Below, one piece after another: positions 17,846-41,612 of a stretch of DNA of 64,000 bases. Below the pieces are notes generated by a model that saw only the letters and a list, made by a program, of their open reading frames with translations, did no database searches and was not told the DNA's origin. The translations under genes and the position numbers were made by a program. Location of the stretch: contig CP075497.1 in the NCBI GenBank assembly GCA_021613535.1, positions 12,090,001 through 12,154,000 on the forward strand, in the 5' to 3' direction. Numbering within the stretch: position 1 is the first letter of the stretch; every line of letters starts with the position of its first letter. Source of the stretch: Adineta vaga (lineage: Eukaryota; Animalia; Rotifera).

Positions 17846-17940
17846 CACTGAAAAACATCGTCGTCGATTGATAAACGCTCCAGAAACGTTTTTTATGCTT
17901 ATCAACCCTTTGATATACGTTTTTTGAATTAATCAGAACA
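17846..17940 (+). mobile_element. CACTG-terminated CACTA/EnSpm-type end (inverted partner at 29177-29270)
   Basis: CACTGAAAAACATCGTCGTCGATTGATAAACGCTCC... is the reverse complement of 29177-29270, with about 11 mismatches in ~94 bp by eye. Confidence 0.7.
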
Positions 17941-18329
17941 AGTATAACGCTCATCCGTAGGATTCGCTGACCCCTCTCTGAAAGAACTATAATGATGATT
18001 AACGCATCTATATTCTTTAAAAAACTCTCTTAATGAGAAGAAACACTCGTCAAAATTTCTTTTCTTGATTTTATGTTTTGATTTTGTTCAGCATCATTGA
18101 AAACCTCGAGATCCAAATTTTAGCGCATCTGGTTGAACGAATAAAAAATACATCAATTTTACTGACAAAGACTCCAGAAACTATTTTGAGATTGCTCAAA
18201 AAATATAGCTAAAAAGAACGCTCATAAAAATTGCAGCTTCTGACGGAATCCGATAGGATTTTGTCGACCTGAGAAGAGCTTTATGAAATAATTCGTTTAA
18301 TGCACTAAAAGATACAGTATCGAAAACTG

Positions 18330-21170
18330 AACAAAATCCTCTACTTAGATATTCTTTCTGTGGACCGATCGGTACTAGTCGAACATTAAAAATACGTAAA
18401 TTTGATAAATATAATGATATTAATTGTTTTTATCTATCCTCTGAAAGAAGAAAAGGAGTGATCCAAAACCTTTTTGGGTTCTACAACATCTCCAGAACCA
18501 GAAAAAGTTCTGTATGACATATGAGAAACCAAGAAAGGTTCTGGGCAACAATTCTGAACTACAAAGGGTTTTGTCCGACAATTCTAAACTATGACGAGTT
18601 CTGTCAGTCATCCCTTAAACTACAGAAGGTTTAGTTATTTTTCTATTGAACCTTGAAAACTCCTTCGTGAGACGAAACTGAATCCAGTTGGTTCGGTAAT
18701 ACAGCTGCAGAACTTTGAAAAGTTCTGTGTACCAATCCGAAACCATGTAAGCTTATGAACAGGCTTGTAAGAAACCGAAATGGTTCTGCCTATTAAATCC
18801 CGAACCCTAAAAAGTTCTGTTTTATTTATTTTGAACCAAAAGGGTTCTGCCCAAAAATACTCAGTTTGAAAGTGTTCGATCTCATAATATTGAATCATAG
18901 AGATTTTTTCCTTCGACGTTACTAAATGTAAAGTTTCTTCTCTAAAATCCGCAATCTGATATAGCTGCCCCAGTGAATGTTGGAGTATCGTAAGTTTCCT
19001 CAACTGAAGAAGAGAGTCACACTCAAAAAATGTATATACGTTCGTTTGTTCATGCAAATCAACAACAATTTAACAACTTTCTTTTCTCTTTTGAGTTTTG
19101 TCATAACAAAAAACGGGAATTCTTTGGCCATTTCAAGTTGTCAATAACGATCTTAGGTATGAACTGAACAACTTAATGTTTTGCATCGACGATGGTGGGA
19201 GTCCACTATCAGTATATGATTATTCCAAGCAATTTTTCAGTCATCCAAATCTGAGGGAGGTTTTTCTCTTATTATTTACATGTAACAAAATCATGTTCAG
19301 GCCAGTTACAAGTTAACAGAGAACGACTCTAATATAGCTCAAACTAACTTATATGTTATGTCAACAATAGAGGGTAGGAGTTGATCAGCTCAAGTCCATG
19401 AACTCTGATGAAATGAACTAAAGAATTATTCAAAAGTTTATCATTTCACCGAGCTCAATCTTTTAAAAATATTCTTTACAAATAAAATGATCTTTTTCAG
19501 CGGTTCCTCTATTCGATTATGTAGAGATATCACGCAGTCATCAACTGATAGTATGTAGGGGTATTTGTATACCCTTGAGCATAGCAGACAGGGACAGGCT
19601 GAGGATTTTATAATACTCGAAAACTTAACTTCAAAGCATGGGTCCCGCATGAAACTTATGAAAGATGATAAGTGACCCAAATGGTGACTTTTTACCAAAA
19701 ACATTTTGTGATTGAAGTTTGCGAAAAAAAATTCTTTTAATTGCTACACCCAACTTTTGTTTTTGGTTTAAGCAGTACTCAGATTCTTAGAATGTTATCG
19801 GAATCTACATCGAATTTCATCCACAGATTTCAAGTCTTTCAGAAGCTATCAAGAGATATATTCAATACGACTTGTTCAATCCCTCTTTCTATTCGGACAG
19901 CTTTCGAAACTAAATATCAGTCCCTGATAGCGGCAGATATTGAGAAGGTCATAGCTTTTAGCGAGAATGTTTATGTTATTATATTTAAAATGAAAAACTA
20001 AATATTGTGTTATCATTTAGGTTCATAGCCATATCTGATTAAAGTTGAGTGACATTTTGAATTTTAGATTAAATATTTTCTATTGTCATTTAGATTCAGA
20101 TCGAAAGTCTAACGAAATGTGAGTTTTATTTTATATAGAAAACTAAATATTTTCTTCTTTTACATTTAGACCGATCTATATTGCAGAGAAATGGTAAGTG
20201 CGATATTAGAAACAAAATAGTAGAATGATTTTCTTTTTATATCTAGGTTGATTTGTAAACGTATTCAAGTACTGCAAGTGCGTCTGTTTATATTACAAGG
20301 TCAAAAACAGACTGAGAAAGTGAATTAGGTTAGGGCTGAATTGAGCCAATCGGCAGCAAGCAAAAAGCGTGATTCGACTGTAGCTTAATTCACTTTTTCG
20401 GTCTATTTGAGAGCTTAACATAAACAGACGCACTTGCAACACTGGAATATGTGTACAAATCAACCTAGATATAAAGAGAAAATAATTTTCTGAAAAACCA
20501 TTTAACACACCTTTTATATCAGACTGAACCTTATTTTTGTATAGAATAATGAAGAGTTCTGTTAGGTTTTAACAGAACCCTCAATGAGCCAGAAGCTTTT
20601 TGTGGGTTCTCAATTTTACCAGTGGGCCGAACCTCCAAAAAGGTTCTGGAAAACTCTTTTATTATTTTCAGAGTTGGCTTTTATACATCTAATATCTGAT
20701 GTGATGAATAAAATTTCAATAGAAGGAAAATGATTGATAAAAGATTGCTCAAAAATATCAACTGCTTCGGATTTGAATTTAAAAGATGCATATGTCAAAT
20801 TAATCAACATCATGCCATATAAATTTGGTTGTGTAGGACCATATTGACGTAATAAATTTGCTGATAAATAACGAAATTATGGAGCACACGATAACAAACA
20901 AATCAATTGATTACAATATATTGAATTATCAACGAGTTAATATTCCATTGAGCTATATGAGAAAGTCATAATGTATTGTGTACATTTCGGAAAGTATAGA
21001 GGCAATTGATCTCAAATTGTGTCGAAGGAAAATAATATGAAAGTGTTCCACAATAGATTTTTAATGTTGAGAGAATCTGAAATAAAACATAGTCTCTCCT
21101 AATATTAATGTAACATACGATCAAACGAGAATTAAATAAATGAATAGACAAAATTATTCTATAGAAGAAT
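18330..21170 (-). pseudogene. Decayed member of an F-box-associated, Leu-rich protein family, split by a CACTA-like insertion
   Basis: Fragments NQLICLLSCAP*FRYLS and FPSIEILFITSDIRCIKAN (right of the insertion) join R*KQLISLYLSNLRIFNVR (left of it). Multiple stops. Family assignment is from motif recall only. Confidence 0.55.
18438..20673. mobile_element. Degenerate CACTA/EnSpm-like element with GAACC/GGTTC subterminal repeats
   Basis: Left CTCTGAAAGAAGAAAAGGAGTGATCCAAAACCTTTTTGGGTTC is inverse to right GAACCTCCAAAAGGTTCTGGAAAACTCTTTTATTATTTTCAGAG. Dense GAACC...GGTTC repeats at 18470-18850 and 20520-20650. Removing the element rejoins a reading frame. Confidence 0.65.
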
Positions 21171-21549
21171 AAAATAATAGGGATCTATCGAAAGACGATA
21201 ATGAAAAGGATATATCACATGATGCTTTAAACAAATATTACCTTCAAAGACAATGATCAAAAAAGATTGGAACACTTATGATAATTAAATGAAAATAGAG
21301 TTGCTCTAATAAATTACTGCTTGTCTATAAATAAGAAACAAAATGAGTAGAAATATAGATGAGATTTACGGAATATTCATTTTTAATTTTGTTCTCATTT
21401 CGTAAGTCTAAATATGGAAGTTTTTTTTATCTCTTTTGCCATGAAAGTAGAAAAGAAAAACTTCTTCTACGCAAGACATTAACACTATTATTTGTTTTCA
21501 TTAGAATTTAAAACATTGAAAAAAGAACGAACAATCATATACTCTATAA

Positions 21550-22370
21550 TTTTGGTCAAAATGTATGTTTTCTAATGGAAGAGAAAGCTTTTATCTGGAA
21601 ACATCAAGTATTAAAAAATAAAGAAAAAGAGTTTATTGAATTTTTTGTATGGATTCAATAGTTATTTACCTAATTATGACAATGGATAATATCCGTTTAC
21701 AATCGATTATTTTAAAATTTACAAGCTCGTCTTTGAATGACGTTGGATAATGTCTTCGTTTTTATCTTGGTTATGATGCAACACTCGTTTGAATTCTCAT
21801 TGTTTGGATGCTGTGAAATTGTTCAAAGGTTATAGGTAACTATTATACAAATTCAATATTTTTTACAAATATATTTAGAGCATTGCAATCAAAATTGATT
21901 AAATCAAACCAAACAAAGTTTATTATTAATTTTTTTATCTCTTTTCGACTAATGTTAGATATTATTGGTTAATTCATGTCAGATATAATCCTATCTTTGT
22001 TAAAATACCAATATTATATGAAAGAAAATTTCCATTTAGTGTAAATATGACAATTATATACTTCATCAATATATTCGTAGTCAAAAAGTCAGTGATCAAT
22101 ATGCCATTGGTTCAATGAAACAAATGTCATGATACATGCGTCGATGGTATATTTTAGAACAATGTTCATCACCATCGATGAATTCAGTAAGGCAGTTCAC
22201 ATTGATTTCTCAAATAAACAAAATCGTCATATTAGATAAAGAAACTATTTTGGATGTACATTCAACAACTAAATGTTCATTATCATGTGTAATTATTTGA
22301 ATGCACAGCATGAAAAACTTCGATAGATCTATAGTATCGTCAGTTTCATCGACACCGATGATGAATATAT
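21550..22370 (+). pseudogene. Possible decayed coding remnants, unidentified
   Basis: Host-like codon usage in stop-interrupted stretches (e.g. WYILEQCSSPSMNSVRQFTLISQINKIVILDKETILDVH) and a GTAACT donor near 21836. No recognisable family. Confidence 0.25.
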
Positions 22371-23345
22371 TCAAAAAGAAATATGTGTAAACTCAAGACA
22401 GAACGACTTTACCACTCTCGAATTAATCATACACTTGTAATTCTCAGAATGATAATGAATAGGAAGGGACTATAAGTGCGGGCCACTATGTAAACATGAA
22501 ACACTCTTTGTGTTTACAAATGCATTTCGCCGTCTTTCATTGAAGCTCGAATATATCGGAAGTTCCATCCAGATGCGATTTATATCCTAAATTGTGTCTC
22601 TAAACATTAGTTAGTTGAGACTGAGATACACTCTTTTCTCTAAAACTTTCTTTTCATCTTGAAAGATGTACGAATAAAAAACATCTTTCTATCATTAGAC
22701 ATCAAACGTCAAATCAAAGAAGCAACTAAATAAAGTTGTCAAACTCGTCATCCACTTTATCTTGACCTCAACCCCAACTCTCTAACGTTACAAATATAGT
22801 AACGATTTGTGAGGCACTCAGACTTTAAACTAAACTCTCTATTATGAGAAATATTCAAAATAAAGTTCGGAAGAATATTTTGCTACGTTTTCATGCACAA
22901 CAGAATGTTTAAGAAATAATTTTCCAGTCGTTCCTAATAGATCAGCGATGGGAATAAGTGCAGTGGACCCATCAAAAGGCTCATAAGACGCATCGACGGT
23001 CGTCCTTCTTCTTCATAACCTTTCCACTATTGAAACATTTTCAGAAGACATTATATTAAGAGTAGACAGTTTCACAAAATATCATATGATACCCATCAAA
23101 CTTCAGTTAATAAATTATAGTGCATTTCTAACACGGGATTTCGCTATCTCGGACAAACACAAATCAACAACTTAGATGATAAACACATCTCTCACGGTCG
23201 CAAATCAAGAGCTTAAAACAAAACACGTTATTGTACGATAAATATGACTTCGAAGCAAACTGTGTATTTATTTGTCACCATATCGGTTTCCTCTGCAAAA
23301 TTCTCCAGAAAAGAGCACTAAAACACAATGTCCCTCGAGTCCAGA

Positions 23346-26300
23346 CTACAACAACAACCTATTTTCAAAAGTATTTCGGAGATACTTTCTTCCTTCGTCG
23401 CCGATTTGATTGCCCCTGAGATCTAGTGTGGTGAGTGTCTATAGACGAGAGAGAGCATGGATGTGTCAATTAGTACAAGAGCGAATGAATATTACCGTGT
23501 TTATTCGCAAGGCATCACCAATATGTTGTGCTCCTTGATGGCCGATTTGATTGTACTCGAGATTTAGTGTGGTGAGTGTCTATAGACGAGAGAGAGCATG
23601 GATGTGTCAATTAGGACAAGAGCGAATGAATATTACCGTGTTTATTCGCAAGGCATCACCAATATGTTGTGCTCCTTGATGGCCGATTTGATTGTACCCG
23701 AGATTTAGTGTGGTGAGTGTCTATAGACGAGAGAGAGTATGGATGTGTCAATTAGGACAAGAGCGAATGAGTATTACCGTGTTTATTCGCAAGGCATCAC
23801 CAATATGTTGTGCTCCTTGATCACCGATTTGATTGTACCGGAGATTTAGTGTGGTGAGTGTCTATAGACGAGAGAGAGCATGGATGTGTCAATTAGGACA
23901 AGAGCGAATGAATATTACCGTGTTTATTCGCAAGGCATCACCAATATGTTGTGCTCCTTGATGGCCGATTTGATTGTCCTCGAGATTTAGTGTGGTGAGT
24001 GTCTATAGAGGAGAGAGAGCATGGATGTGTCAATTAGGACAAGAGCGAATGAGTATTACCGTGTTTATTCGCAAGGCATCACCAATATGTTGTGCTCCTT
24101 GATCACCGATTTGATTGTCCCAGAGATTTAGTGTGGTGAGTGTCTATAGACGAGAGAGAGTATGGATGTGTCAATTAGGACAAGAGCGAATGAATATTAC
24201 TGTGTTTATTCGCAAGGCATCACCAATATGTTGTGCTCCTTCGTGGCCGATATGATTGTTCTCGAGATTTAGTGTGGTGAGTGTCTGTAGAGGAAGGAGA
24301 GCATGGGTGGGTCAATTACGACAAGACTGAATGAGTATTACCGTGTTTACTTGCAAGGCATCACCAATATGTTGTGCTCCTTGATCACCGATTTGATTGT
24401 CCCAGAGATTTAGTGTGCTGAGTGTCTATAGACGAGACAAATAGCATGGATGTGTCAATCAGGACAAGAGCGAATGAATATTACTGTGTTTATTCGCAAG
24501 GCATCACCAATATGTTGTGCTCCTTGATGGCCGATTTGATTGTCCCAGAGATTTAGTGTGATGAGTGTCTATAGAAGAGAGAGAGCATGGATGTGTCCAT
24601 TAGGACAAGAGCGAATGAATAGTACTGTGTTTATTCGCAAGGCTTCACCAATATGTTGTGCTCCTTCATGCCCGATTCGATTGTACTCGAGACTTAGTGT
24701 GGTGAGTGTCTGTAGAGGAAGGAGAGCATGGGTGGGTCAATTAGGACAAGACTGAATGAGTATTACCGTGTTTACTTGCAAGGCATCACCAATATGTTGT
24801 GCTCCTTGATCACCGATTTGATTGTCCCAGAGATTTAGTGTGGTGAGTGTCTATAGACGAGACAAATAGCATGGATGTGTCAATCAGGACAAGAGCGAAT
24901 GAATATTACTGTGTTTATTCGCAAGGCATCACCAATATGTTGTGCTCCTTCGTGGCCGATATGATTGCGCCCGATATCTAGCATAGTGAGTGTCTATAGA
25001 CGAGAGAGAGAGTGGATGTGTCCATTAGGACAAGAGCGAATGAATATTACTGTGTTTATTCGCAAGGCATCACCAATATGTTGTGCTCCTTGATCACCGA
25101 TTTGATTGCTCTGGAGATTTAGTGTGGTGAGTGTCTATAGACGAGAGAGAGCATGGATGTGTCAATTAGGACAAGAGCGAATGAATATTACTGTGTTTAT
25201 TCGCAAGGCATCACCAATATGTTGTGCTCCTTGATCACCGATTTGATTGTTCCGGAGATTTAGTGTGGTGAGTGTCTATAGACGAGAGAGAGCATGGATG
25301 TGTCAATTAGGACAAGAGCGAATGAATATTACCGTGTTTGTTCGCAAGGCATCACCAATATGTTGTGCTCCTTGTTCCCCGATTTGATTCAACCGGAGGT
25401 TTAGTGTGGTGAGTGTCTATAGACGAGAGAGATAGCATAAATGTATCAACTAGGTGAAGAGCGAATGAATATTACCGTGTTTGTTCGCAAGGCATCACCA
25501 ATATGTTGTGCTCCTCGTTCCCCGATTTGAGTGTTCCACAGATCAAGTGTGGTGAGTGTCTATAGACGAGAGAGAGAGTATGGATGTGTCAATTAGGACA
25601 AGAGCGAATGAATATTACTGTGTTTATTCGCAAGGCATCATCAATATGTTGTGCTCCTTGATCACCGATATGATTGTTCTCGAGATTTAGTGTGCTGAGT
25701 GTCTATAGACGAGAGAGAGTATGGATGTGTCAATTAGGACAAGAGCGAATGAATATTACTGTGTTTATTCGCAAGGCATCACTAATATGTTGTGCTCCTT
25801 GATCACCGATTTGATTGTCCCAGAGATTTAGTGTGGTGAGTGTCTATAGACGAGACAAATAGCATGGATGTGTCAATCAGGACAAGAGCGAATGAATATT
25901 ACTGTGTTTATTCGCAAGGCATCACTGATATGTTGTGCTCCTTGATGGCCGATTTGATTGTCCCAGAGGTTTAGTGTGGTGAGTGTCTATAGACGAGACA
26001 AATAGCATGGATGTGTCAATCAGGACAAGAGCGAATGAATATTACTGTGTTTATTCGCAAGGCATCACCAATATGTTGTGCTGCTTGATCACCGATTTGA
26101 TTGTGCCCAAGATTTAGTGTGGTGAGTGTCTATAGACGAGAGAGAGAGTATGGATGTGTCAATTAGGACAAGAGCGAATGAATATTACTGTGTTTATTCG
26201 CAAGGCATCACCAATATGTTGTGCTCCTTGATCACCGATATGATTGTTCTCGAGATTTAGTGTGGTGAGTGTCTGTAGAGGAAGGAGAGCATGGATGTGT

Positions 26301-27503
26301 CCATTAGGACAAGAGCGAATGAATAGTACTGTGTTTATTCGCAAGGCATCACCAATACGTTGTGCTCCTTCATGGCCGATTCGATTGTACTCGAGACTTA
26401 GTGTGGTGAGTGTCTGTAGAGGAAGGAGAGCATGGGTGGGTCAATTAGGACAAGACTGAATGAGTATTACCGTGTTTACTTGCAAGGCATCACCAATATG
26501 TTGTGCTCCTTGATCACCGATTTGATTGTCCCAGAGATTTAGTGTGGTGAGTGTCTATAGACGAGAGAGAGTATGGATGTGTCAATTAGGACAAGAGCGA
26601 ATGAATATTACTGTGTTTATTCGCAAGGCATCACCAATATGTTGTGCTCCTTCATGGCCGATTCGATTGTACTCGAGACTTAGTGTGGTGAGTGTCTATG
26701 TATAGAATATTCATTTGGAGAATGTGGGTAAATCAATCGGAACTTTATAGTAAGGATTTTCAATTAGATATTGCACTATACAAGAGGTGTGGCGGTAGTG
26801 TGGGCAAGTGTTCGATCTGGGTTCATGGAATGAAAAGAGAAATTGGTGCTTGTCTGATTATTACTGAGTTAATGTTCGAATCGTCAGATGAGTAGAGTGA
26901 GTACTGTACTGAAGGTAGTTATACTTGTTTATTTCGAAGGGTTTTGGATTGTTATTTTTAGATTTGGTTTGCGAAAGATCGTATTGAGTCGGGGCAGAAT
27001 ATGAAACAATTCACTTTATTTTATTGGGTGGGTTGCAAAAATAGTTGTTGAATTGTTCAAGAGTTGCAATAGAGACATTTGTTTAAAACGGGAAAGGTGT
27101 TTTAATGCTGTGGTTTTGTTCTTGTGCGGCAGATGAGTGCACGTTTAGTAAGATATATATTTTATGGGTATAGATAGAAAAGAACAGGTGAGAGGAAGGG
27201 TTGTTTTAATAGCATGAGTCAATTTTGTGCTTGGTTGACTCGTGGAAATTGCTTCGGAATTGTGAAATGTGTTTTTTTTTTGAGTAAACTGATTAAGTTA
27301 GATATTGCTAGGTTCATGTGTGCTTGAACAGTTGAGAAAATAGGTAAAGCACTTTGCAAACTTACTTGATATCGATGATAAATGTTCAGAATTTGATTAA
27401 AACGTTGGCAAACATTTTGCATTGAACAAAATAGTGTAAAATCAGACAGATGATCCAAAATTCGATAGACGAGTTCAATCGGTAATGTTGAAAATGTGTA
27501 CAT
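23346..27503 (-). CDS. F-box + 24 RI/NLRC3-type leucine-rich repeats, one LRR per exon (~720 aa predicted)
   Basis: Exon 1 (27366-27503) MYTFSTLPIELVYRILDHLSDFTLFCSMQNVCQRFNQIL is an F-box, followed by a GTAAGT donor. Then 23 exons of exactly 84 bp (26612-26695 down to 23496-23579; consensus TLTTLNLxxNQIGDQGAQHIGDALRINT) and a terminal exon 23346-23438 (TLTTLDLRGNQIGDEGRKYLRNTFENRLLL*). All introns are GT..AG, phase 0; no stops or frameshifts in exons. Confidence 0.9.
23400..26697. repeat. Tandem array of 141/143-bp units (84-bp LRR exon + 57/59-bp intron)
   Basis: Periodicity read directly (e.g. ATTAC donors at 23491, 23632, 23773). More GC-rich than the flanks. Confidence 0.97.
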
Positions 27504-28729
27504 ATTCGCTTTAAATTCCACAAAAGTTTGTTGAGAATACAAGCTATTGAATATATTTTGTTTGTTATGAAAAGAAATTCGCTTTACTATTACTGATAGT
27601 ATTGTATTTTTGTTATTCGAAAAAGGTAATGAAATCTGACGATTTCAACAAAAGCGAATAGCTCGTTTATGCAGAAAGATGGCGTTAATGTATTTATTGA
27701 TTGGAGTTTCGTTTGACGTGTATGATTATCAGTGTCAGTATCAGTATACACTCAAGATATGTATTTTTCATTAGTAATTTTTTGAGTTTTGCAAAAGAGT
27801 TCGTTTTAAGAAAGGATATTTTTGCATGTGATATTCAACAAAAGTTCAATCAGAAAAGGAAATCTTTGAGGGTAGATACCGATAGTCTCTACTTTTCACA
27901 CTCACGCTCCATACCCTCACAAACTAATTTCATTCCATTAGTTCGACGTAAGGCAATTTTTGTTTCAAATACGTCTATCCTTAAAGATCTTAACAAGAAA
28001 ATTAATTGAATTAAAGAAAACAAAGCCGGTTCATCTTATCGTGATGTGTGAGATAACGTTTTTGTATGAACAACTGGTGGCGTATCAAATATTCTCAAAA
28101 GCAAAAGAAAACACATGAAAGTATAAACTAAGTTCGAGTCTGACTCTCACCGAGTTAACTGAGGCTGTTGCATGTCTATGCCATCGTATCTCTAAGATGT
28201 TCTTATATGATTTGCTTATTCCGCTACGTTTTTCATTGATTCCAATAGTGTTCAAACTAGACAAATTACTGTACTTTATTTTTCTCAAACCTGCTACGGG
28301 TTCGATTCTATCTATGTGTTCATTTATTGAATTATCATCTCTAGAATGATCAATAGTTTCTATTTCAATATTACAAAACTTTTAATGATTTTATGAATAA
28401 ATAATGACCGACTGATGATTGTAATCTCATATTATATCTATCGAAAGCGCGTATTTAGCTCGTACTGAAGGGTAGAGCAATATTTTGATCTTGTGCAGCC
28501 TTTAACTTTTAACCCATGATCCTTCACATTGACCCCACCTATCATCCTACCCTTAATCTACTTTCGGTTTCCGATGTTTAAGACAGTCTTGTAGAAAATG
28601 GTTTTTTGACCTTTGACACTGACACAAAAACGCACAGAAACTTTTTTTTCATATGACGCTCCTTTCTGTGGAAGGAATAAGGTGTGGGTGTAAGTGTTCC
28701 TTGACAGAGTACGCACATACATACATCCA

Positions 28730-28925
28730 CACAAGGGGAAAAGGCCGATCCTGGATCCTCATAGTTCCTGCGATCACACAGTTCATGATGACCAATGATA
28801 ACTCATGAGTATCTTTCAGGATTCACGAGAGTCAGCCTTTTTGAGATACCAGGATTTATGGGGAGCCATGAGGGTCCGAAAGTTTTATAGGATTTGGGTA
28901 TCAAGGATCCGCTTTTTCCCCTTTG
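28730..28925. mobile_element. Small MITE (CMC-like)
   Basis: CACAAGGGGAAAAGGCCGATCCTGGA is inverse to TCAAGGATCCGCTTTTTCCCCTTTG. CA flanks both sides. Nested in a GGTGTGGGTGT...ACCCACACC inverted simple repeat. Confidence 0.6.
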
Positions 28926-28956
28926 CAGACCCACACCCACCCACACCCTCAAGATG

Positions 28957-30322: not shown

Positions 30323-33300
30323 CTAAAAATCCAGACTTGCATAATTATTTTCAATATCTTCATCTGATAAAAATACAGATGAATAAATCGAATTGTTCTT
30401 AGTATTCAATTGAACTGATTGTCTTTTATTTGATTCGTCTATTTTTGATGATACACGTGTATTTGAATTGTAAATTGTATGAGAAGTTTGTTTATCAAGA
30501 CTCTCACTTGGTAAATAAGATCGTTTTGCTAATGTCACAACATTTGTTCGTTCATTACTCGTCATTCGTGAAAGTAATCTTCGTCCATCATTAGTTCCGA
30601 CATGTTCGAGATGTTGATAATTCGTTGGCTCGGATATTACAACATCTGAAAATGATTTTGAAGAATTAGAAAATCTTTTGGAATTTCTGTCTGAAATGTT
30701 TAATGATATTTTTGTTCGACTTTCATGTTTTATATAAAGTAATCTTGAATGGTTTTGATTAAGTTCTTGATCATTTGAAAGTGATATTGATCCATCGATG
30801 GTTAGTGGAGAAGTTTTCGATAGAGGAAAGGATTGTAACCAAAGTCCATTGAAAATATCATAAATATCGATCGATTTTTCTGAATAAAGAAATAAATATG
30901 GTTCAGAATATGATGTGGATATTGGTAAAGATGGCCACATTAATTCTTGATGACGTGTTCGCATTCCACTTAGAAAATTTATATAAAGACCGATTTTACG
31001 ATAAACAAGTAACAATTCAGTTATTGTTGAAGTATCTAAATCAATAAAATATTTTCAATCAAATCGCAAAAATCATTTTTTTATTTACTTCTGACAACAA
31101 TCACTCGTAATATTTCCAAAGATCTTTCAAAGAAGCTTTTCAATGTTGGATCTTTATCTCTTAATAATTTAATACTTGGAAATTGTCGATCAATCCTTTG
31201 TGCAAGAAATGTTGATCCATAACCATACCAAATAATTCGTTCATCGGAATCTTGAATTTTGATCATGGAAATTTCTAAATATGTAATGATATGTGTTGTA
31301 TGTAAATCACATAAATGTGTGTAAGGATAAGGGTGAGGTTTAGGATGGATTTTATAAACATGAAGTCCATTTTTAATTGCAACACATAATGTTAAGGAGT
31401 GAGGATCAAGTGCGAATAATGTCGCATTCTTTGTTTCAGGTATTTTTGTATCAAATGATGTTTGACAATGTTTAAGTAAATGATTGAGAGATTTTATACG
31501 AATGATTCGTTCTTTGCCAGATAAAATCACTAAGAATTGATTATTTGATAAAACAGATAATTGATAAACTTTTTTATCATATAATTTGTTCAATGCTAAA
31601 ACAATTCATAGAAACAAGATAAAGTATAGAAAATTTGTTTTGTTTTTTTACAATCGGTATGGATATCGAATAGATAAAGACCATCTTCACTGGAAAGAAG
31701 AAAACGATTTAGATCTATAATGACAAATCATTTGAATTAGTTGCGATTGAATATCTATATGATTACCGAGAATAAAAGCAGAAGTGATTTTCTTCAAATT
31801 GATATCACGAATTTCATTGACATGAAAATTCTCATGTTCCTAAGAGAAAAACAAATGAAAGATAAATTCATTGAAATTTCAGGTTAACAAACATTCAATT
31901 GGAGTGATTTTAATCGATCGATATATTGATCTCTTTCTGAACTATTATTTGCCGATACAAAGATATATTTCATTCGTTCTGGTGAAGAAATTTTCGTCAA
32001 ACGAATCTAAATTTCAATTCATTATTAAGTTTTTAAATAAAAAAGAAATTCACTTTGAAGATATTTGTAATTTCATTTTTATGTACATCAAGTCGATCGG
32101 ATGCTCTGATTGGATAAATATGAAAATTCTGATCAATAATATCAATGATTAAAAATGGTTGAGGCCAATTGATATTTTTATCGATAATTAAATCATAGAA
32201 TAAGATTTTCGTATCAGTGATTAATAATTGGCATTTTTTCCATTCTTTTTTTAAATCTTCACTTTTAGGAATCTATTTTAAATTGAAAGGAAATTCTTTG
32301 AATTGAAACAAAAAGAAGACTTACTCGAACAATATGTTGATCAAGAAGATTAATTCGATCTAGCGAAGAAAAACAACGAGAAGATAACGATGAAAAAAAA
32401 GGTAAAGATTTACTTCGATCTTTATTAGCTAAATCACATGGACTTGATATTTTTTCCATACATTCCGAATGACAAATTATCGCACAACCTAAAAGTTTTT
32501 GATTTTATCCAAAACAAAACATGAAGCTAAGCAAGTCACATACATCTACAAATAAATCCTTGTCGAATAATTCCAATTAATGCATATCGACAAAAATGAC
32601 AAATTGTAGGTAAACGAAAATTTCCCAATGTAAAATCATGTAAAGGATTCTAAAACAAAATAATAATACTTTATGATGACACGAAAATGATCTTTGTATG
32701 AAAATATTACAGATCGAGGAGTTAACGGTTCATCAACAGTTGAAAGATCCGACTGAAATTTGAAACAGAATTTTTATTTAGAAAAAATTTATGTTCTTAC
32801 TGATGTTTCTGTAGAAAGTCTTTCCATAGAACTACGTGTTGGAAATCGATCCCTTGATAGAGACAATTGAGATTGAGCTAAGAAAAATGAAAGATTTGAA
32901 TTCTATTGACCTATTTTTCTTGGTTTTATTCAATAGGTCTTGCTATTACAGAAAAGAATTGGCTGGAAGTCTTTTACCTGATGATTTGATTTGTTTATCA
33001 ATTACTTGTTTTTTTAACAAATCATTTTCTTCTTTTAAACGATTGATTTCTAACTCGGATTGTCTAAATTTCTCTTCAAATTCTTGTCGAATTTGAATTT
33101 CTCTTTCCATTCTTATTGTTAATTGTTGAATTTCCATATGTTGTAATTTCAATGAACGACTCAAACCTCGCGACTAAAGACACCAAATTTGAAATATTCA
33201 ATTAGAAAAAATTCAAAACAAACAAGACTATTTTTTGAACTGGATGCTGTTGTAATCGTCATTGTTGTTCGAGGATTTGTTGTTTCTTCTAATTGATCCA

Positions 33301-40159: not shown

Positions 40160-41612
40160 TTTGAGTCTATGGTCTTTTATATTTCAAATTGAATTTAAAA
40201 AAAATCGGACCCCATTTATACATATACCGTGGAATTTGGAGATCTAACAGAACAACACCTTCCACAACGACTAGCATCAAAGATATTACATTTCATACGG
40301 AATCAATATTAGAGTGGAAACCATACCGTAGTATAGTGCTCAAAACTAGACCTCAAGTATTCAACTATTTAGTTACCTATTTATGCAACTGTTCAGTTAT
40401 TCCATTACACCGCCAACACCCTGAATATACTAATACCCCCACCACACCCCCTGCACCCTCAATATGCTAATACCCCGCCACACCCTTCCCGCACCCTCAA
40501 TATGGAGGACTAAGAGAACTAGGAGGACTAAGAGGACTAAGAAAATTGCGAGATAGTTCGCATCTTTGGACTCTATGGTCTTTTTGAATTCTTTCTGAAT
40601 TCAAAATCACAAGCCATAACCATATTTTTCCACACAACCCTGGGTATACGGGTCTAAAACAAACAATTGGTTCTATTCAATGACCGACAGTCATTGTTAT
40701 ATATCCAGATGGTGCGACACACAATTGTTCAGATTATTTTTCACGATTCTTATCATTTCACTTGACCATGACCAGACATAAATCCAGTACTGTGTTCATA
40801 GACTCGCCTTAATTCATCACTAGTGATGAAAAATCTGTATACCCAGTTAGATACTTTCACCTTAGTCAATTTGAAAGACTCAGGGTCTAAGGGTATAAGG
40901 GTCTATGGGTCTAAAGGGCATAAGGATGTAAGTGTATAAGGGTCATCAGAGTCTAAAGGGTCTAAAGGGTATAAGGGTATAAGGGTGTAAGTGTATAAGG
41001 GTCTATGGGTCTAATGGGTATAAGGGTCTAACGGTGTAAGTGTATAAGGGTATAAGGGTCTAAAGGGTATAAGGGTCTAAGGGTATAACGGTGTAAGTGT
41101 ATAAGGGTCATAAGGGTCTAAAGGGTATAAGAGTATAAGACCCTTACACCCTTAGACCCTTTGGACCCTGAGACCCTTTAGACCGTTATACCCTTATACA
41201 CTTACACCGTTATACCCTTTAGACCCTTAGACCCTTAGACCCTTTAGACCCAAAGTTATGACGACTTCCGAAGTTATGAAGGACGAAGGTATGCATGTGT
41301 ATATGTATATAATTATGAAGATTCGAAGACTCATGATTTCAATCGGAAATGATATCTGTTTCTTCTTTTCTTAATTCAGAAAGAATTCAAATAGACCATT
41401 ATATGCTCCTTCTAGTCCTCTTAGTTCTCTTAGTCCTCCTAGTGTTCTTAATTATCGTAACTTATCATGTTAATAGAGACTATAGACAAAACATTTTATA
41501 TAATGAATTACAAAAATGTGTGTTTTCTTAAATCCGCTAGTCCTCCCATTTCAGTTTTAACTTAGATTCATATTTTTCGTTAAAATTCTGATTGAAATTT
41601 AAAAGACCATTA
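40160..41612. mobile_element. Foldback-like element with nested inverted repeats and a palindromic satellite core
   Basis: Symmetric order A(40169)-B(40504)-C(40571)-core-C'(41373)-B'(41406)-A'(41592). Confidence 0.6.
40883..41251. repeat. Degenerate 8-9-mer satellite (GGGTATAA/GGGTCTAA) that inverts at ~41140
   Basis: G-rich units 40883-41139 are followed by their reverse complements (TTAGACCC/TTATACCC) at 41140-41251. Confidence 0.92.

What the first reader, a model, noticed from the sequence alone, without database searches (positions are those of the whole stretch)
23346..27503. Modular F-box/LRR gene: one LRR per symmetric exon with hypervariable ligand-facing codons (candidate diversifying recognition system)
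Seen: one F-box exon, 23 exons of exactly 84 bp and a terminal LRR exon, all phase 0. Introns and framework codons are nearly identical between units. The two codons in LxL-xx-N vary radically. In gene order they read EY, WD, EY, EN, GH, WD, WD, EN, WN, RL, RN, QS, GR, WD, EY, WD, WD, EN, WD, ED, RY, GY, EY, RG (13 distinct), with lesser variation at N/S/D, Q/H/R and D/H/E. Indels occur only in introns. Established: these positions lie on or next to the concave binding face of RI-type LRRs, and F-boxes recruit substrates to SCF ubiquitin ligases. One-repeat-per-exon shuffling is described for brown-algal ROCO LRR genes. Inference: any unit can be skipped, duplicated or swapped without frameshift, giving a combinatorial intracellular receptor that would send foreign proteins for degradation.
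Basis: partly seen in the sequence, partly recalled or inferred. Interest (0 to 1): 0.92.

Follow-up and report, generated by a model that had tools for sequence, protein, structure and literature searches.

The report
Rotifer F-box gene, hypervariable LRR exons
This is a real, expressed animal gene that joins a ubiquitin-ligase adaptor (F-box) to 24 nearly identical leucine-rich repeats, one per exon; two neighbouring residues in each repeat change far faster than neutral DNA, which marks it, and a family of at least about 45-60 similar genes, as a fast-evolving recognition system whose targets are unknown.

Summary
The gene lies on the minus strand. It has an F-box exon (27503-27366), a 670-bp intron, 23 exons of exactly 84 bp separated by 57- or 59-bp GT-AG introns, and a terminal LRR exon (23438-23346).

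- **Expression:** contigs from three studies stop exactly at the predicted exon borders and continue into the neighbouring exon. The genome holds no intronless copy, so the gene is transcribed and spliced as predicted.
- **Family:** at least 45-60 loci on all six contigs, and 416 LRR exon cores genome-wide. The scan holds 17 first-stage notes of this kind in this genome.
- **Selection:** in 242 units from 31 loci, first and second positions of codons 8-9 differ 3.6 times more often than intron sites and 6.4 times more often than synonymous sites in independently chosen pairs (about 5- and 10-fold after correction). Codons 6, 11 and 14 are also raised. No unit carries a stop or an exonic indel.
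- **Structure:** in a model of a relative, these residues line the loop between strand and helix of a ribonuclease-inhibitor/NLR-type LRR.
- **Not shown:** exon-skipping isoforms, exchange of units between paralogues, Skp1 binding, and foreign targets.

Verdict: a new variant of a known kind.

The parts
27366..27503 (-). Exon 1: start codon and F-box (46 codons), ending in phase 0 before GTAAGT
   Evidence: The translation matches Pfam F-box-like PF12937 (1.1e-5, 25.5 bits, cut-off 24.3) and F-box PF00646 (1.7e-5). An RNA contig covers 27366-27527 with no mismatch and ends exactly at 27366. The same 46-codon exon is found at 150 scored places in the genome, about 60 of them at 74% identity or more.
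26696..27365 (-). Intron 1 (670 bp), GT..AG
   Evidence: The donor is GTAAGT at 27365 and the acceptor is CATAG before 26695. No RNA contigs lie inside it, apart from one 76-nt piece with 3 mismatches. In 26 paralogues its length is 659-683 nt.
23496..26695 (-). Array of 23 LRR exons of 84 bp (28 codons each) separated by 22 introns of 57 or 59 bp. Exon first bases (minus strand): 26695, 26554, 26413, 26272, 26129, 25986, 25843, 25702, 25559, 25416, 25275, 25134, 24993, 24850, 24709, 24568, 24425, 24284, 24143, 24002, 23861, 23720, 23579. Codons 8-9 of each exon (bases 22-27) are hypervariable.
   Evidence: Exon and intron coordinates, GT-AG borders and translations come. Tandem Repeats Finder gives period 141. 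Single exons match Pfam LRR_6. RNA contig pieces end at exon borders 23496, 24002, 24284, 24425, 25333, 25476, 26189 and 26272, and their loose ends read the adjoining exon. One joint, 24568>24626, skips exactly 57 nt with GT..AG on the minus strand.
23346..23438 (-). Terminal exon: last LRR with a divergent C-terminal half (30 codons) and the stop codon. It is preceded by a 57-bp intron (23439-23495).
   Evidence: Translation is. Pfam LRR_6 scores 2.6e-7, 30.6 bits. An RNA contig covers 23311-23438 with no mismatch, runs 35 nt past the stop, and is spliced at 23438 to the end of the previous exon.
27504..28938 (-). 5' flank shared with paralogous loci (about 91-95% identity in the closer copies). 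The homology of this copy ends at about 28938.
   Evidence: The other copies remain alike among themselves beyond this point, so 28938 is this copy's breakpoint and not a family terminus.
17937..23345 (-). 3' flank of about 5.4 kb shared with 20 or more paralogous loci (about 91-97% identity in the closer copies). No ORF exceeds 140 aa and no Pfam match was found. It holds a 264-nt palindrome at 20224-20487.
   Evidence: Whether 17937 is a family terminus or only this copy's end could not be settled, because no more paralogue DNA could be fetched.

Best explanation
This is an intact, transcribed gene of a bdelloid rotifer. The species is most likely Adineta vaga, inferred from a 100.8-Mb genome in six pieces and from its closest database relatives.

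**Shown**
- The gene encodes a 720-residue protein: an N-terminal F-box joined directly to 24 ribonuclease-inhibitor/NLR-type leucine-rich repeats of 28 residues.
- Each repeat is one symmetric phase-0 exon. Exon plus intron form a 141-bp unit, so the LRR domain is a minisatellite-like array. Units can be gained or lost by unequal recombination without breaking the frame.
- Paralogues carry from 2 to 24 repeats.
- The gene is one of at least 45-60 recently duplicated copies. Each copy lies in a larger shared segment of 11 kb or more, and the copies are spread over all six chromosomes.
- The framework and the introns drift at about the neutral rate, but stops, frameshifts and splice-site losses are excluded.
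- Residues 8 and 9 of each repeat change several times faster than neutral sites. Residues 6, 11 and 14 do so to a lesser degree. In a model of a relative these residues line the loop between the strand and the helix. I read this as diversifying selection.

**Inferred**
- That loop is the rim that ribonuclease inhibitor uses to grip its ligands.
- The F-box docks the protein on Skp1 in an SCF ubiquitin ligase.
- The variable rim of the LRR solenoid picks the substrate.
- The family tracks fast-changing targets, such as proteins of pathogens, of mobile elements or of other conflict partners, and marks them for ubiquitination.
For: **Gene model:**. **Domains:**

**Splicing and expression**
- Contigs of four runs from three studies end at the predicted borders and continue into the next exon.
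- Some pieces are specific to this locus. One covers 24365-24425, with the WD type seen only in this gene. Others are the 24568>24626 joint, 23311-23438 and 27366-27527, all with no mismatch.
- No exon-exon junction exists in the genome within 3 mismatches of a 39-nt probe.

**Family size**
- Many loci share the F-box exon and the array.
- A 27-nt exon core has 416 matches against 0 for the control.

**Selection**
- Amino-acid entropy is 2.85 and 2.98 bits at positions 8 and 9, and at most 1.06 at framework positions.
- In pairs chosen on framework sites only, codon 8-9 first and second positions differ at 0.372 per site against 0.103 in introns (Fisher 6e-35).
- In pairs chosen on introns only, they differ at 0.521 per site against 0.082 at framework third positions (2e-76).
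- After Jukes-Cantor correction the ratios are about 4.7 and 10 (my arithmetic).
- Third positions of the two codons stay largely fixed (NNG NNC), as expected for selection on the amino acid.

**Purifying selection on coding capacity**
- Of 242 exon-like 84-mers found without regard to reading frame, none has a stop and one has a lost acceptor.
- About 44 of the 222 distinct exons would carry a stop if the same numbers of changes fell at random.
- All length changes are intronic.

**Fold and position of the variable residues**
- In the AlphaFold model of a relative (P0168:1-215, mean pLDDT 81.5), the strand covers repeat positions 4-6 and the helix covers 13-26.
- Foldseek matches it to NOD2 and ribonuclease inhibitor at TM 0.8 and rmsd 1.6.
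- A sequence search also finds ribonuclease inhibitor and NLRs.

**Same LRR module on other effector domains in bdelloids**
- It is joined to RING/B-box, U-box, ADP-ribosyltransferase, caspase and kinase domains.

**Same gene structure in another bdelloid assembly:**
Against: - No binding partner or substrate is known, and Skp1 binding was not tested.
- The F-box part of the model has low confidence (pLDDT 43-63).
- The fold and the residue positions were obtained on relatives, not on this protein. The joined 720-residue product was not sent to any search or fold tool.
- Nothing links the family to infection. The one bdelloid pathogen-response paper I checked does not mention F-box, LRR or ubiquitin.
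- Framework nonsynonymous and synonymous differences are about equal (0.071 against 0.082). Constraint on the scaffold is therefore weak, apart from the exclusion of stops and indels.
- Units are related by descent. My pair tests use each unit only once, but they are not a full codon model on a tree.
- The neighbouring paralogue carries a stop inside its terminal exon, so some family members may be decaying.
Confidence: 0.6

Rival explanations
1. The array is a combinatorial system in the individual animal: regulated exon skipping, or somatic reshuffling of the cassettes, yields many receptor isoforms from one gene.
For: All 23 internal exons are symmetric (phase 0-0) and 84 bp long, so any subset can be spliced in frame. 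The contigs show a few long-range joints with GT..AG ends on the minus strand: the F-box exon joined to exon 23 (skips 3786) and exon 10 joined to exon 16 (skips 764).
Against: Those joints rest on only 21-29 nt on the shorter side. Over that length the exon starts of different units and paralogues differ by 0-1 base. The same table holds out-of-order joints (exon 9-like end to exon 2 or exon 4), which point to paralogues or to contig assembly across repeats rather than to isoforms. Short-read contigs cannot resolve a 141-bp repeat array.
Confidence: 0.1
2. The hypervariable codons are made by a targeted mutation mechanism, such as a diversity-generating retroelement-like or templated process, and not by selection on ordinary mutations.
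For: Units that are identical or nearly so at 130 other sites differ at 2-4 of the 6 bases of codons 8-9. Units 20 and 22 are an example: 0 differences outside these codons and 2 inside. The first two codon positions vary while the third stays fixed, which recalls the AAY design of diversity-generating retroelements.
Against: The variation is not tied to adenines. Many framework adenines are invariant, and at codons 6 and 14 the first base varies while the adjacent A does not. A frame-blind process would have to spare exactly the two third positions. The common types EN, GY and RY recur in 15, 13 and 9 genes with the same codons, which suits inherited, selected types. No template copy or reverse transcriptase was seen in the shared 11-kb segment.
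Confidence: 0.03
3. The family is a substrate receptor for internal conflicts or for fast-evolving endogenous partners, not for pathogens. Candidates are proteins of transposable elements, toxin-antidote pairs and germline factors. Alternatively it is cargo that spreads with a mobile element.
For: The gene lies in a dispersed repeat of 11 kb or more, with 20 or more copies at about 91-97% identity on all six contigs. Of the 45 closest F-box matches, 38 lie in the outer parts of the contigs (my count). A published note says that an LRR multigene family member of Adineta vaga may have been moved by a Penelope element (PMC3846280). Newborn F-box genes can act in hybrid incompatibility in nematodes (title and abstract listed).
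Against: No transposase, reverse transcriptase or other element protein was found in the shared flanks, where no ORF exceeds 140 aa and Pfam finds nothing. The 5' end of homology differs between copies. No terminal repeats or target-site duplications could be examined, because no further paralogue DNA could be fetched.
Confidence: 0.22
4. The array is a decaying or non-functional tandem repeat that merely looks like exons.
For: Framework nonsynonymous and synonymous differences are about equal. One close paralogue has a premature stop in its terminal exon.
Against: Among 242 units there are 0 stops and 1 lost splice site, where about 44 distinct exons with stops would be expected by chance. 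No exonic indels occur, although intron indels are frequent. Spliced transcripts are present. The same structure occurs in another bdelloid assembly.
Confidence: 0.03

Closest known systems
Expanded F-box gene families of nematodes and plants under positive selection (for example Caenorhabditis elegans F-box genes, PMC8120010; induced by virus infection, PMC5392922)
   Same: Both are large, lineage-specific, fast-turning-over families of SCF substrate adaptors. Titles and abstracts report strong positive selection in these genes. A role in defence has been proposed for them, which I state from my own knowledge.
   Different: The nematode families use FBA/FTH-type substrate domains, which I state from my own knowledge. 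Here the substrate domain is a ribonuclease-inhibitor-type LRR array built from one exon per repeat, and selection is focused on one di-residue per repeat.
Ectocarpus (brown alga) ROCO and NB-ARC-TPR genes with one repeat per exon (PMC3341825, PMC11378527)
   Same: Each LRR is one phase-0 exon of constant length. Exon gain and loss produce variable arrays, and positively selected sites lie on the concave face. The genes are proposed to be immune receptors.
   Different: In the alga the exons are 72 nt (24 residues) of the plant-specific LRR type, joined to a ROC-COR GTPase. Here they are 84 nt (28 residues) of the ribonuclease-inhibitor type, joined to an F-box in an animal. The units are also far more uniform (about 90% identity, introns included), and the variation is concentrated in two codons.
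Ribonuclease inhibitor and the LRR domains of NOD/NLRP receptors
   Same: The repeats are of the same class (28-29 residues). Among solved structures these are matches by sequence (1e-27 to 1e-30) and the closest matches by fold (TM 0.8, rmsd 1.6), both measured on relatives. The variable positions lie in the loop after the strand. From my own knowledge, ribonuclease inhibitor uses that loop to contact ribonucleases, and the exon-repeat correspondence is also described for the ribonuclease inhibitor and NLRP genes.
   Different: Those proteins have no F-box, and their repeats have diverged from one another. Their exons encode pairs of repeats, and they are not minisatellite-like arrays.
Canonical F-box/LRR proteins (FBXL family, such as Skp2; plant TIR1/COI1)
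   Same: Both have an F-box followed by an LRR solenoid that binds the substrate of an SCF ligase.
   Different: FBXL repeats are of the cysteine-containing class of about 26 residues, which I state from my own knowledge. Here the period is exactly 28 residues, there is no conserved cysteine, and the closest structures are ribonuclease inhibitor and NLRs.
Near-identical tandem repeats with a hypervariable residue pair or triplet: TAL effector repeats (residues 12-13) and the PRDM9 zinc-finger minisatellite (84-bp units)
   Same: Both show a highly uniform repeat scaffold with variation focused on the ligand-contacting residues, and arrays that change by repeat gain and loss. This comparison rests on my own knowledge.
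   Different: The folds and ligands differ, since those proteins bind DNA. Their arrays lie in a single exon. Nothing here suggests one repeat reading one unit of a polymer.

Membership tests
F-box proteins (Pfam PF12937 / PF00646) | A sequence match to the F-box profile above the curated cut-off | tested here: met
   Exon 1 scores 25.5 bits on PF12937 (cut-off 24.3) and 24.9 bits on PF00646 (cut-off 20.5).
F-box proteins (functional SCF adaptors) | Binding to Skp1 | not testable with these tools
   No Skp1 of this organism could be supplied by reference, and no complex prediction was run.
Ribonuclease-inhibitor-type LRR (28-29 residue class; Pfam LRR_6) | A repeat period of 28-29 residues with the LxxLxLxxNxIG...A..L..AL..N pattern, and a match to LRR_6 | tested here: met
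   The period is exactly 28 residues in 23 exons. Single exons score 23.8 and 30.6 bits on LRR_6 (cut-off 23.4); two others score 20.3 and 13.0, below it.
Ribonuclease-inhibitor-type LRR | A strand-loop-helix solenoid superposable on ribonuclease inhibitor or NLR LRR domains | tested here: inconclusive
   The feature is met for a relative only. The model of P0168:1-215 has pLDDT 81.5 and reaches TM 0.80 and rmsd 1.6 against NOD2 and ribonuclease inhibitor. This gene's own joined product was not folded.
FBXL family (F-box with cysteine-containing LRRs) | LRRs of the cysteine-containing class, about 26 residues long | tested here: not met
   The period is 28 residues, no cysteine is conserved in the repeat, and the closest structures are ribonuclease inhibitor and NLRs. 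The definition of the class is from my own knowledge.
Exon-per-repeat shuffled LRR receptors (Ectocarpus ROCO type) | Each LRR is encoded by one phase-0 exon of constant length, in arrays of variable length | tested here: met
   There are 23 exons of 84 bp, all phase 0. Paralogues whose two ends are both covered carry 1-23 such exons.
Exon-per-repeat shuffled LRR receptors (Ectocarpus ROCO type) | A ROC-COR GTPase domain and 72-nt exons | tested here: not met
   The only other domain is an F-box, and the exons are 84 nt.
Genes under diversifying selection at ligand-contact sites | Nonsynonymous change at the candidate sites exceeds neutral change | tested here: met
   Codon 8-9 first and second positions differ at 0.372 against 0.103 in introns, and at 0.521 against 0.082 at synonymous positions, in pairs chosen on other sites. 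No full codon model was run.
Diversity-generating retroelement targets | Adenine-specific variation, a template repeat and a reverse transcriptase nearby | tested here: not met
   The variation is not limited to adenines, and framework adenines are invariant. No reverse transcriptase was found in the shared segment.
Somatically assembled LRR receptors (lamprey VLR type) | An incomplete germline gene completed by copying of flanking cassettes in somatic cells | not testable with these tools
   The germline gene here is complete and spliced in order, as far as short contigs show. Somatic DNA variation could not be examined.

The most novel reading that the evidence does not exclude
The 400 or more one-exon LRR cassettes of this genome form a germline diversification system. 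They are attached to F-box domains and, in related genes, to RING/B-box, U-box, ADP-ribosyltransferase and caspase domains. Gain, loss and reshuffling of units during repair of double-strand breaks, perhaps together with exon skipping, would keep generating new recognition surfaces. That would give an animal that rarely or never has sex a substitute for recombination at immune loci, with a small alphabet of di-residues acting as a recognition code.
Probability: 0.12. Interest if true: 0.9.

Novelty: new variant of a known kind. Interest (0 to 1): 0.68.

Why it matters
Bdelloid rotifers are the textbook case of animals that persist without regular sex, and how they keep pace with parasites is an open question.

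This locus shows that their genome holds a large, young and actively transcribed family of ubiquitin-ligase adaptors. The recognition domain of these adaptors is built to change:
- its units are identical in size and phase;
- the number of units varies from gene to gene;
- a di-residue per unit is under strong diversifying selection.

The same LRR module is also joined to other effector domains in bdelloids.

The family gives a defined set of candidate intracellular receptors. They can be tested for induction by pathogens, for their substrates, and for variation between clones.

The very regular scaffold, with two variable residues per repeat, is also of interest as a natural design for binding proteins.

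I found no paper that describes this architecture in rotifers. The literature only mentions LRR expansions in general terms (PMC3846280).

Tried and rejected
1. **Exchange of units between paralogues (ectopic gene conversion).** I compared the number of near-identical unit pairs between genes with the number expected from the divergence of intron 1. Observed counts were 3, 6 and 16 against 10.8, 42.7 and 103 expected, at 0, 1 and 2 or fewer differences in 130 sites. There is no excess, so the idea is not supported. I had first read the near-identical units as concerted evolution between genes and withdrew that reading.
2. **Diversity-generating retroelement-like adenine mutagenesis.** Rejected.
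3. **A hidden exon in intron 1, or upstream coding exons.**
   - No contigs lie in intron 1.
   - The N-terminal 172 residues of database protein P0003 have no match in the window or in the 31 family loci.
4. **Finding this gene's own annotated product in the protein databases.**
   - The F-box exon search returned mostly short unspliced ORFs.
   - Two homology searches returned relatives but not the window's protein among the 120 rows listed in each.
Exons were searched one by one by reference, and relatives from the database stood in for the fold.
5. **Fetching whole paralogous arrays.** The family analysis rests on 31 merged loci, many of them partial.
6. **Exon-skipping isoforms.** The long-range joints are ambiguous.
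7. **A mobile-element identity for the shared 11-kb segment.** No element protein was found, and the termini could not be defined.
8. **Literature.** Searches for bdelloid or rotifer together with F-box and LRR found nothing specific. The pathogen-response paper holds none of the terms.


Full report
**What is there**

The feature lies on the minus strand. Tandem Repeats Finder reports a 141-bp unit in 23.3 copies between 23401 and 26699 (89% matches, no indels, score 5121).

Read on the minus strand, each unit is an 84-bp open exon followed by a 57- or 59-bp intron with GT and AG ends. The gene model is:
- ATG at 27503;
- F-box exon 27503-27366 (46 codons), then GTAAGT;
- a 670-bp intron down to 26696;
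- 23 exons of exactly 84 bp (26695-26612 through 23579-23496);
- a terminal exon 23438-23346 (30 codons and the stop).

All junctions fall between codons. The product would have 46 + 23 x 28 + 30 = 720 residues.

The eight longer introns carry 2-bp insertions, and no exon differs in length.

Pfam recognises an F-box in exon 1 above the curated cut-offs and LRR_6 in the single LRR exons tested.

**Is it expressed and spliced as predicted?**

I laid the contigs of four public runs from three studies on 23300-27560. The run type on record is only a guess, but the contigs settle the question themselves.
- Their pieces stop exactly at predicted exon borders: 23438, 23496, 24002, 24284, 24425, 25333, 25476, 26189, 26272 and 27366.
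- The letters that run on are the first letters of the next exon or the last letters of the previous one.
- One joint skips exactly the 57-bp intron 24569-24625, with GT..AG on the minus strand.
- The genome holds no intronless exon-exon junction within 3 mismatches of a 39-nt probe. These contigs therefore come from spliced RNA.

Some pieces are specific to this locus:
- 24365-24425, which covers a Ser-3 variant and the WD type that I saw only in this gene;
- the exon 15-16 joint;
- 27366-27527, the F-box exon with 24 nt of leader;
- 23311-23438, the terminal exon with 35 nt of trailer.

All four have no mismatch. Intron 1 is empty apart from one 76-nt piece with three mismatches.

A few long-range joints also appear: the F-box exon joined to exon 23, exon 10 joined to exon 16, and some out-of-order joints.
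- They rest on only 21-29 nt. Over that length units and paralogues differ by 0-1 base.
- Contigs built from short words break and join inside such repeats.
- I therefore do not count them as evidence for exon skipping.

**The family**
- The F-box exon has 150 scored matches in the genome. About 60 of them are at 74% identity or more, on all six contigs.
- A 507-bp piece of the array has over 200 matches at 77-94% identity.
- A 27-nt conserved exon core occurs 416 times within 3 mismatches, against 0 for the reversed control.
- I merged the fetched DNA into 31 loci holding 242 units. More DNA could not be fetched.
- Paralogues whose two ends are both covered carry from 1 to 23 of the 84-bp exons.
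- The scan's own index holds 17 first-stage notes of this kind in this genome. One concerns the neighbour 96 kb away, which I analysed. Another concerns an ADP-ribosyltransferase with such an array.
- In another bdelloid assembly (GCA_905250095.1) a related gene has the same F-box exon, GTAAGT donor and 84-bp exons at 141-bp spacing.
- Database relatives come from Adineta steineri, A. ricciae, A. vaga, Rotaria species and Didymodactylos.
- In those relatives the same LRR module is joined to F-box, RING/B-box, U-box, ADP-ribosyltransferase, caspase and kinase domains.

The genome size (100.8 Mb in six pieces) and these relatives make Adineta vaga the likely source. That is an inference.

**Are the two codons really hypervariable?**

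Within this gene:
- per-site diversity is 0.37 at codons 8-9, 0.096 in introns and 0.093 at third positions.

Across the family:
- amino-acid entropy is 2.85 and 2.98 bits at positions 8 and 9;
- it is 2.22 at position 11, and 1.55 and 1.50 at positions 6 and 14;
- it is at most 1.06 elsewhere;
- there are 65 di-residue types.

To avoid counting shared ancestry many times, I paired each unit once with its nearest relative. To avoid bias, I chose the pairs on one class of sites and measured on another.

| Pairs chosen on | Codon 8-9, positions 1-2 | Neutral comparison | Fisher P | Ratio after Jukes-Cantor (my arithmetic) |
|---|---|---|---|---|
| Framework sites | 0.372 per site | introns, 0.103 | 6e-35 | about 4.7 |
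| Introns | 0.521 per site | framework third positions, 0.082 | 2e-76 | about 10 |

- First positions of codons 6, 11 and 14 are raised too (26, 37 and 29 differences in 84 pairs).
- The third positions of the two codons stay mostly fixed (NNG NNC). That pattern fits selection on the amino acid and does not fit a frame-blind mutation hot spot.

**Coding capacity is protected**
- A scan that ignored reading frame and splice sites found 242 exon-like 84-mers. None has a stop, and one has a lost acceptor.
- If the same numbers of changes fell at random, about 44 of the 222 distinct exons would hold a stop. The minimum was 26 in 300 trials.
- Every length change is intronic.
- Framework nonsynonymous and synonymous differences are about equal (0.071 and 0.082). 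The scaffold is therefore only weakly constrained beyond staying open and in frame.

**How old are the types, and do units move between genes?**
- Neutral-site distance depends mostly on the gene: 0.08-0.09 within a gene and 0.12-0.16 between genes. It depends little on the di-residue type.
- EN, GY and RY occur in 15, 13 and 9 genes. WD occurs only in this gene and LS only in its neighbour.
- The neighbour, on the opposite strand, has an identical F-box exon (138 of 138 bases), 98% identity over the 300 nt upstream, 92% in intron 1 and 97% in the 3' flank. Yet its set of di-residues is almost wholly different. New types therefore arise and spread inside single genes after duplication.
- I first took the near-identical units found in different genes for exchange between paralogues. 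The number of such pairs is in fact below what intron-1 divergence predicts. I withdraw that reading: recent gene duplication explains them.
- Within this gene, units 2 and 14 are identical. Units 20 and 22 differ only at two bases, both in codons 8-9.

**Where the variable residues sit**

Exons were searched singly by reference, and relatives from the database stood in for the fold.
- A relative that has the same F-box exon and junction (P0168, residues 1-215, with a small alignment) folds with mean pLDDT 81.5. The LRR part scores above 85 and the F-box part only 43-63.
- In every repeat the strand covers positions 4-6 and the helix covers 13-26.
  - Positions 8, 9 and 11 therefore lie in the loop after the strand.
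  - Position 6 ends the strand.
  - Position 14 starts the helix.
- The model superposes on NOD2 and ribonuclease inhibitor at TM 0.8 and rmsd 1.6.
- A sequence search also finds ribonuclease inhibitor, NLRPs and LRRC34.
- From established knowledge of ribonuclease inhibitor complexes, this loop is the main contact surface. More exactly, it is the rim of that face.

**Surroundings**
- Homology with 20 or more paralogous loci does not stop at the gene.
  - It runs from window 28938 (1435 nt upstream of the ATG) to about 17937 (5.4 kb beyond the stop).
  - Identity is about 91-97% in the closer copies.
- Other copies remain alike among themselves further upstream, so 28938 is this copy's own breakpoint.
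- The 5.4-kb flank has no ORF above 140 residues and no Pfam match. It holds a 264-nt palindrome.
- The family therefore spread as segments of 11 kb or more. Whether a mobile element moved them could not be settled. A published note links one LRR gene of Adineta vaga to a Penelope element (PMC3846280).
- Of the 45 closest F-box matches, 38 lie in the outer parts of the contigs (my count).
- The next gene upstream, at 30.3-31.6 kb, encodes a CNH domain.

**How it most likely works**

Shown:
- an expressed gene for an F-box joined to 24 ribonuclease-inhibitor-type repeats;
- an array that can change its unit number in frame;
- strong diversifying selection on a rim of residues;
- a large young family.

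Inferred:
- the F-box docks on Skp1 in an SCF ligase;
- the variable rim chooses the substrate;
- the family follows fast-changing targets.

Which targets these are remains open. Pathogen proteins, mobile-element proteins and other conflict partners are all possible. I put 0.6 on the whole reading. Most of the doubt lies in this last, functional step.

**Comparison and novelty**

Three features are known separately:
- one repeat per symmetric exon with positive selection is known from brown-alga ROCO genes (PMC3341825);
- expanded, positively selected F-box families are known from nematodes and plants (PMC8120010 and others);
- LRR expansions in Adineta vaga have been mentioned in general terms (PMC3846280).

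I found no description of the combination seen here:
- an F-box on a ribonuclease-inhibitor-type array;
- a minisatellite-like exon-plus-intron unit;
- a hypervariable di-residue per repeat;
- an animal host.

I file it as a new variant of a known kind.

Noticed in passing
window 17937-28938: The whole gene lies inside a dispersed repeat of 11 kb or more, shared with 20 or more loci on all six contigs at about 91-97% identity. The 5.4 kb beyond the stop has no ORF above 140 aa and no Pfam match. The termini and the mode of spread are unknown.
   Followed up: partly
window 20224-20487: This is a 264-nt palindrome with arms of 72 nt (89% complementary) enclosing a second pair of 45-nt arms. It lies inside the shared 3' flank and is also matched on the opposite strand in many paralogous copies.
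   Followed up: partly
G000:C6:11990035-11994070 (loci L031, L030, L006, L007 and others), + strand, 96 kb from the window: This is the nearest paralogue. Its F-box exon is identical and it has 22 exons of 84 bp, mostly with 59-bp introns. Its di-residue set is almost wholly different (WG, GY, LS, GG, WE, RS, QS). It has an in-frame stop 14 codons before the usual end of the terminal exon.
   Followed up: partly
proteins P0157, P0166, P0182, P0299, P0229 and others: In bdelloid rotifers the same ribonuclease-inhibitor-type LRR module is annotated together with RING/B-box, U-box, NAD:arginine ADP-ribosyltransferase, caspase, kinase and NACHT domains. That is a repertoire of LRR-guided effector proteins.
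   Followed up: no
proteins P0276, P0277, P0270, P0305: Proteins of Rickettsiales endosymbionts of amoebae, one of them named an F-box protein, match the rotifer LRR region at 43-56% identity over about 79% of the query. This could reflect gene transfer between host and endosymbiont, or convergence. Mortierellaceae fungi and Capsaspora also score high.
   Followed up: no
window 40882-41139: This is a tandem array of an 8-bp unit (AGGGTATA, about 31 copies, 76% matches), with higher-order periods of 41 and 49 bp.
   Followed up: no
window 30323-31593, minus strand: Two ORFs match the CNH domain (PF00780; 5.7e-12 and 5.7e-11). They are probably exons of one ordinary host gene, just upstream of the breakpoint of the shared segment.
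   Followed up: no
window 27225-27365, minus strand: If intron 1 were retained, the frame stays open for 49 more codons, which would give a 95-residue F-box-only product. Many database entries of 60-140 residues are such unspliced ORF calls (for example P0002). No RNA contig supports retention.
   Followed up: partly
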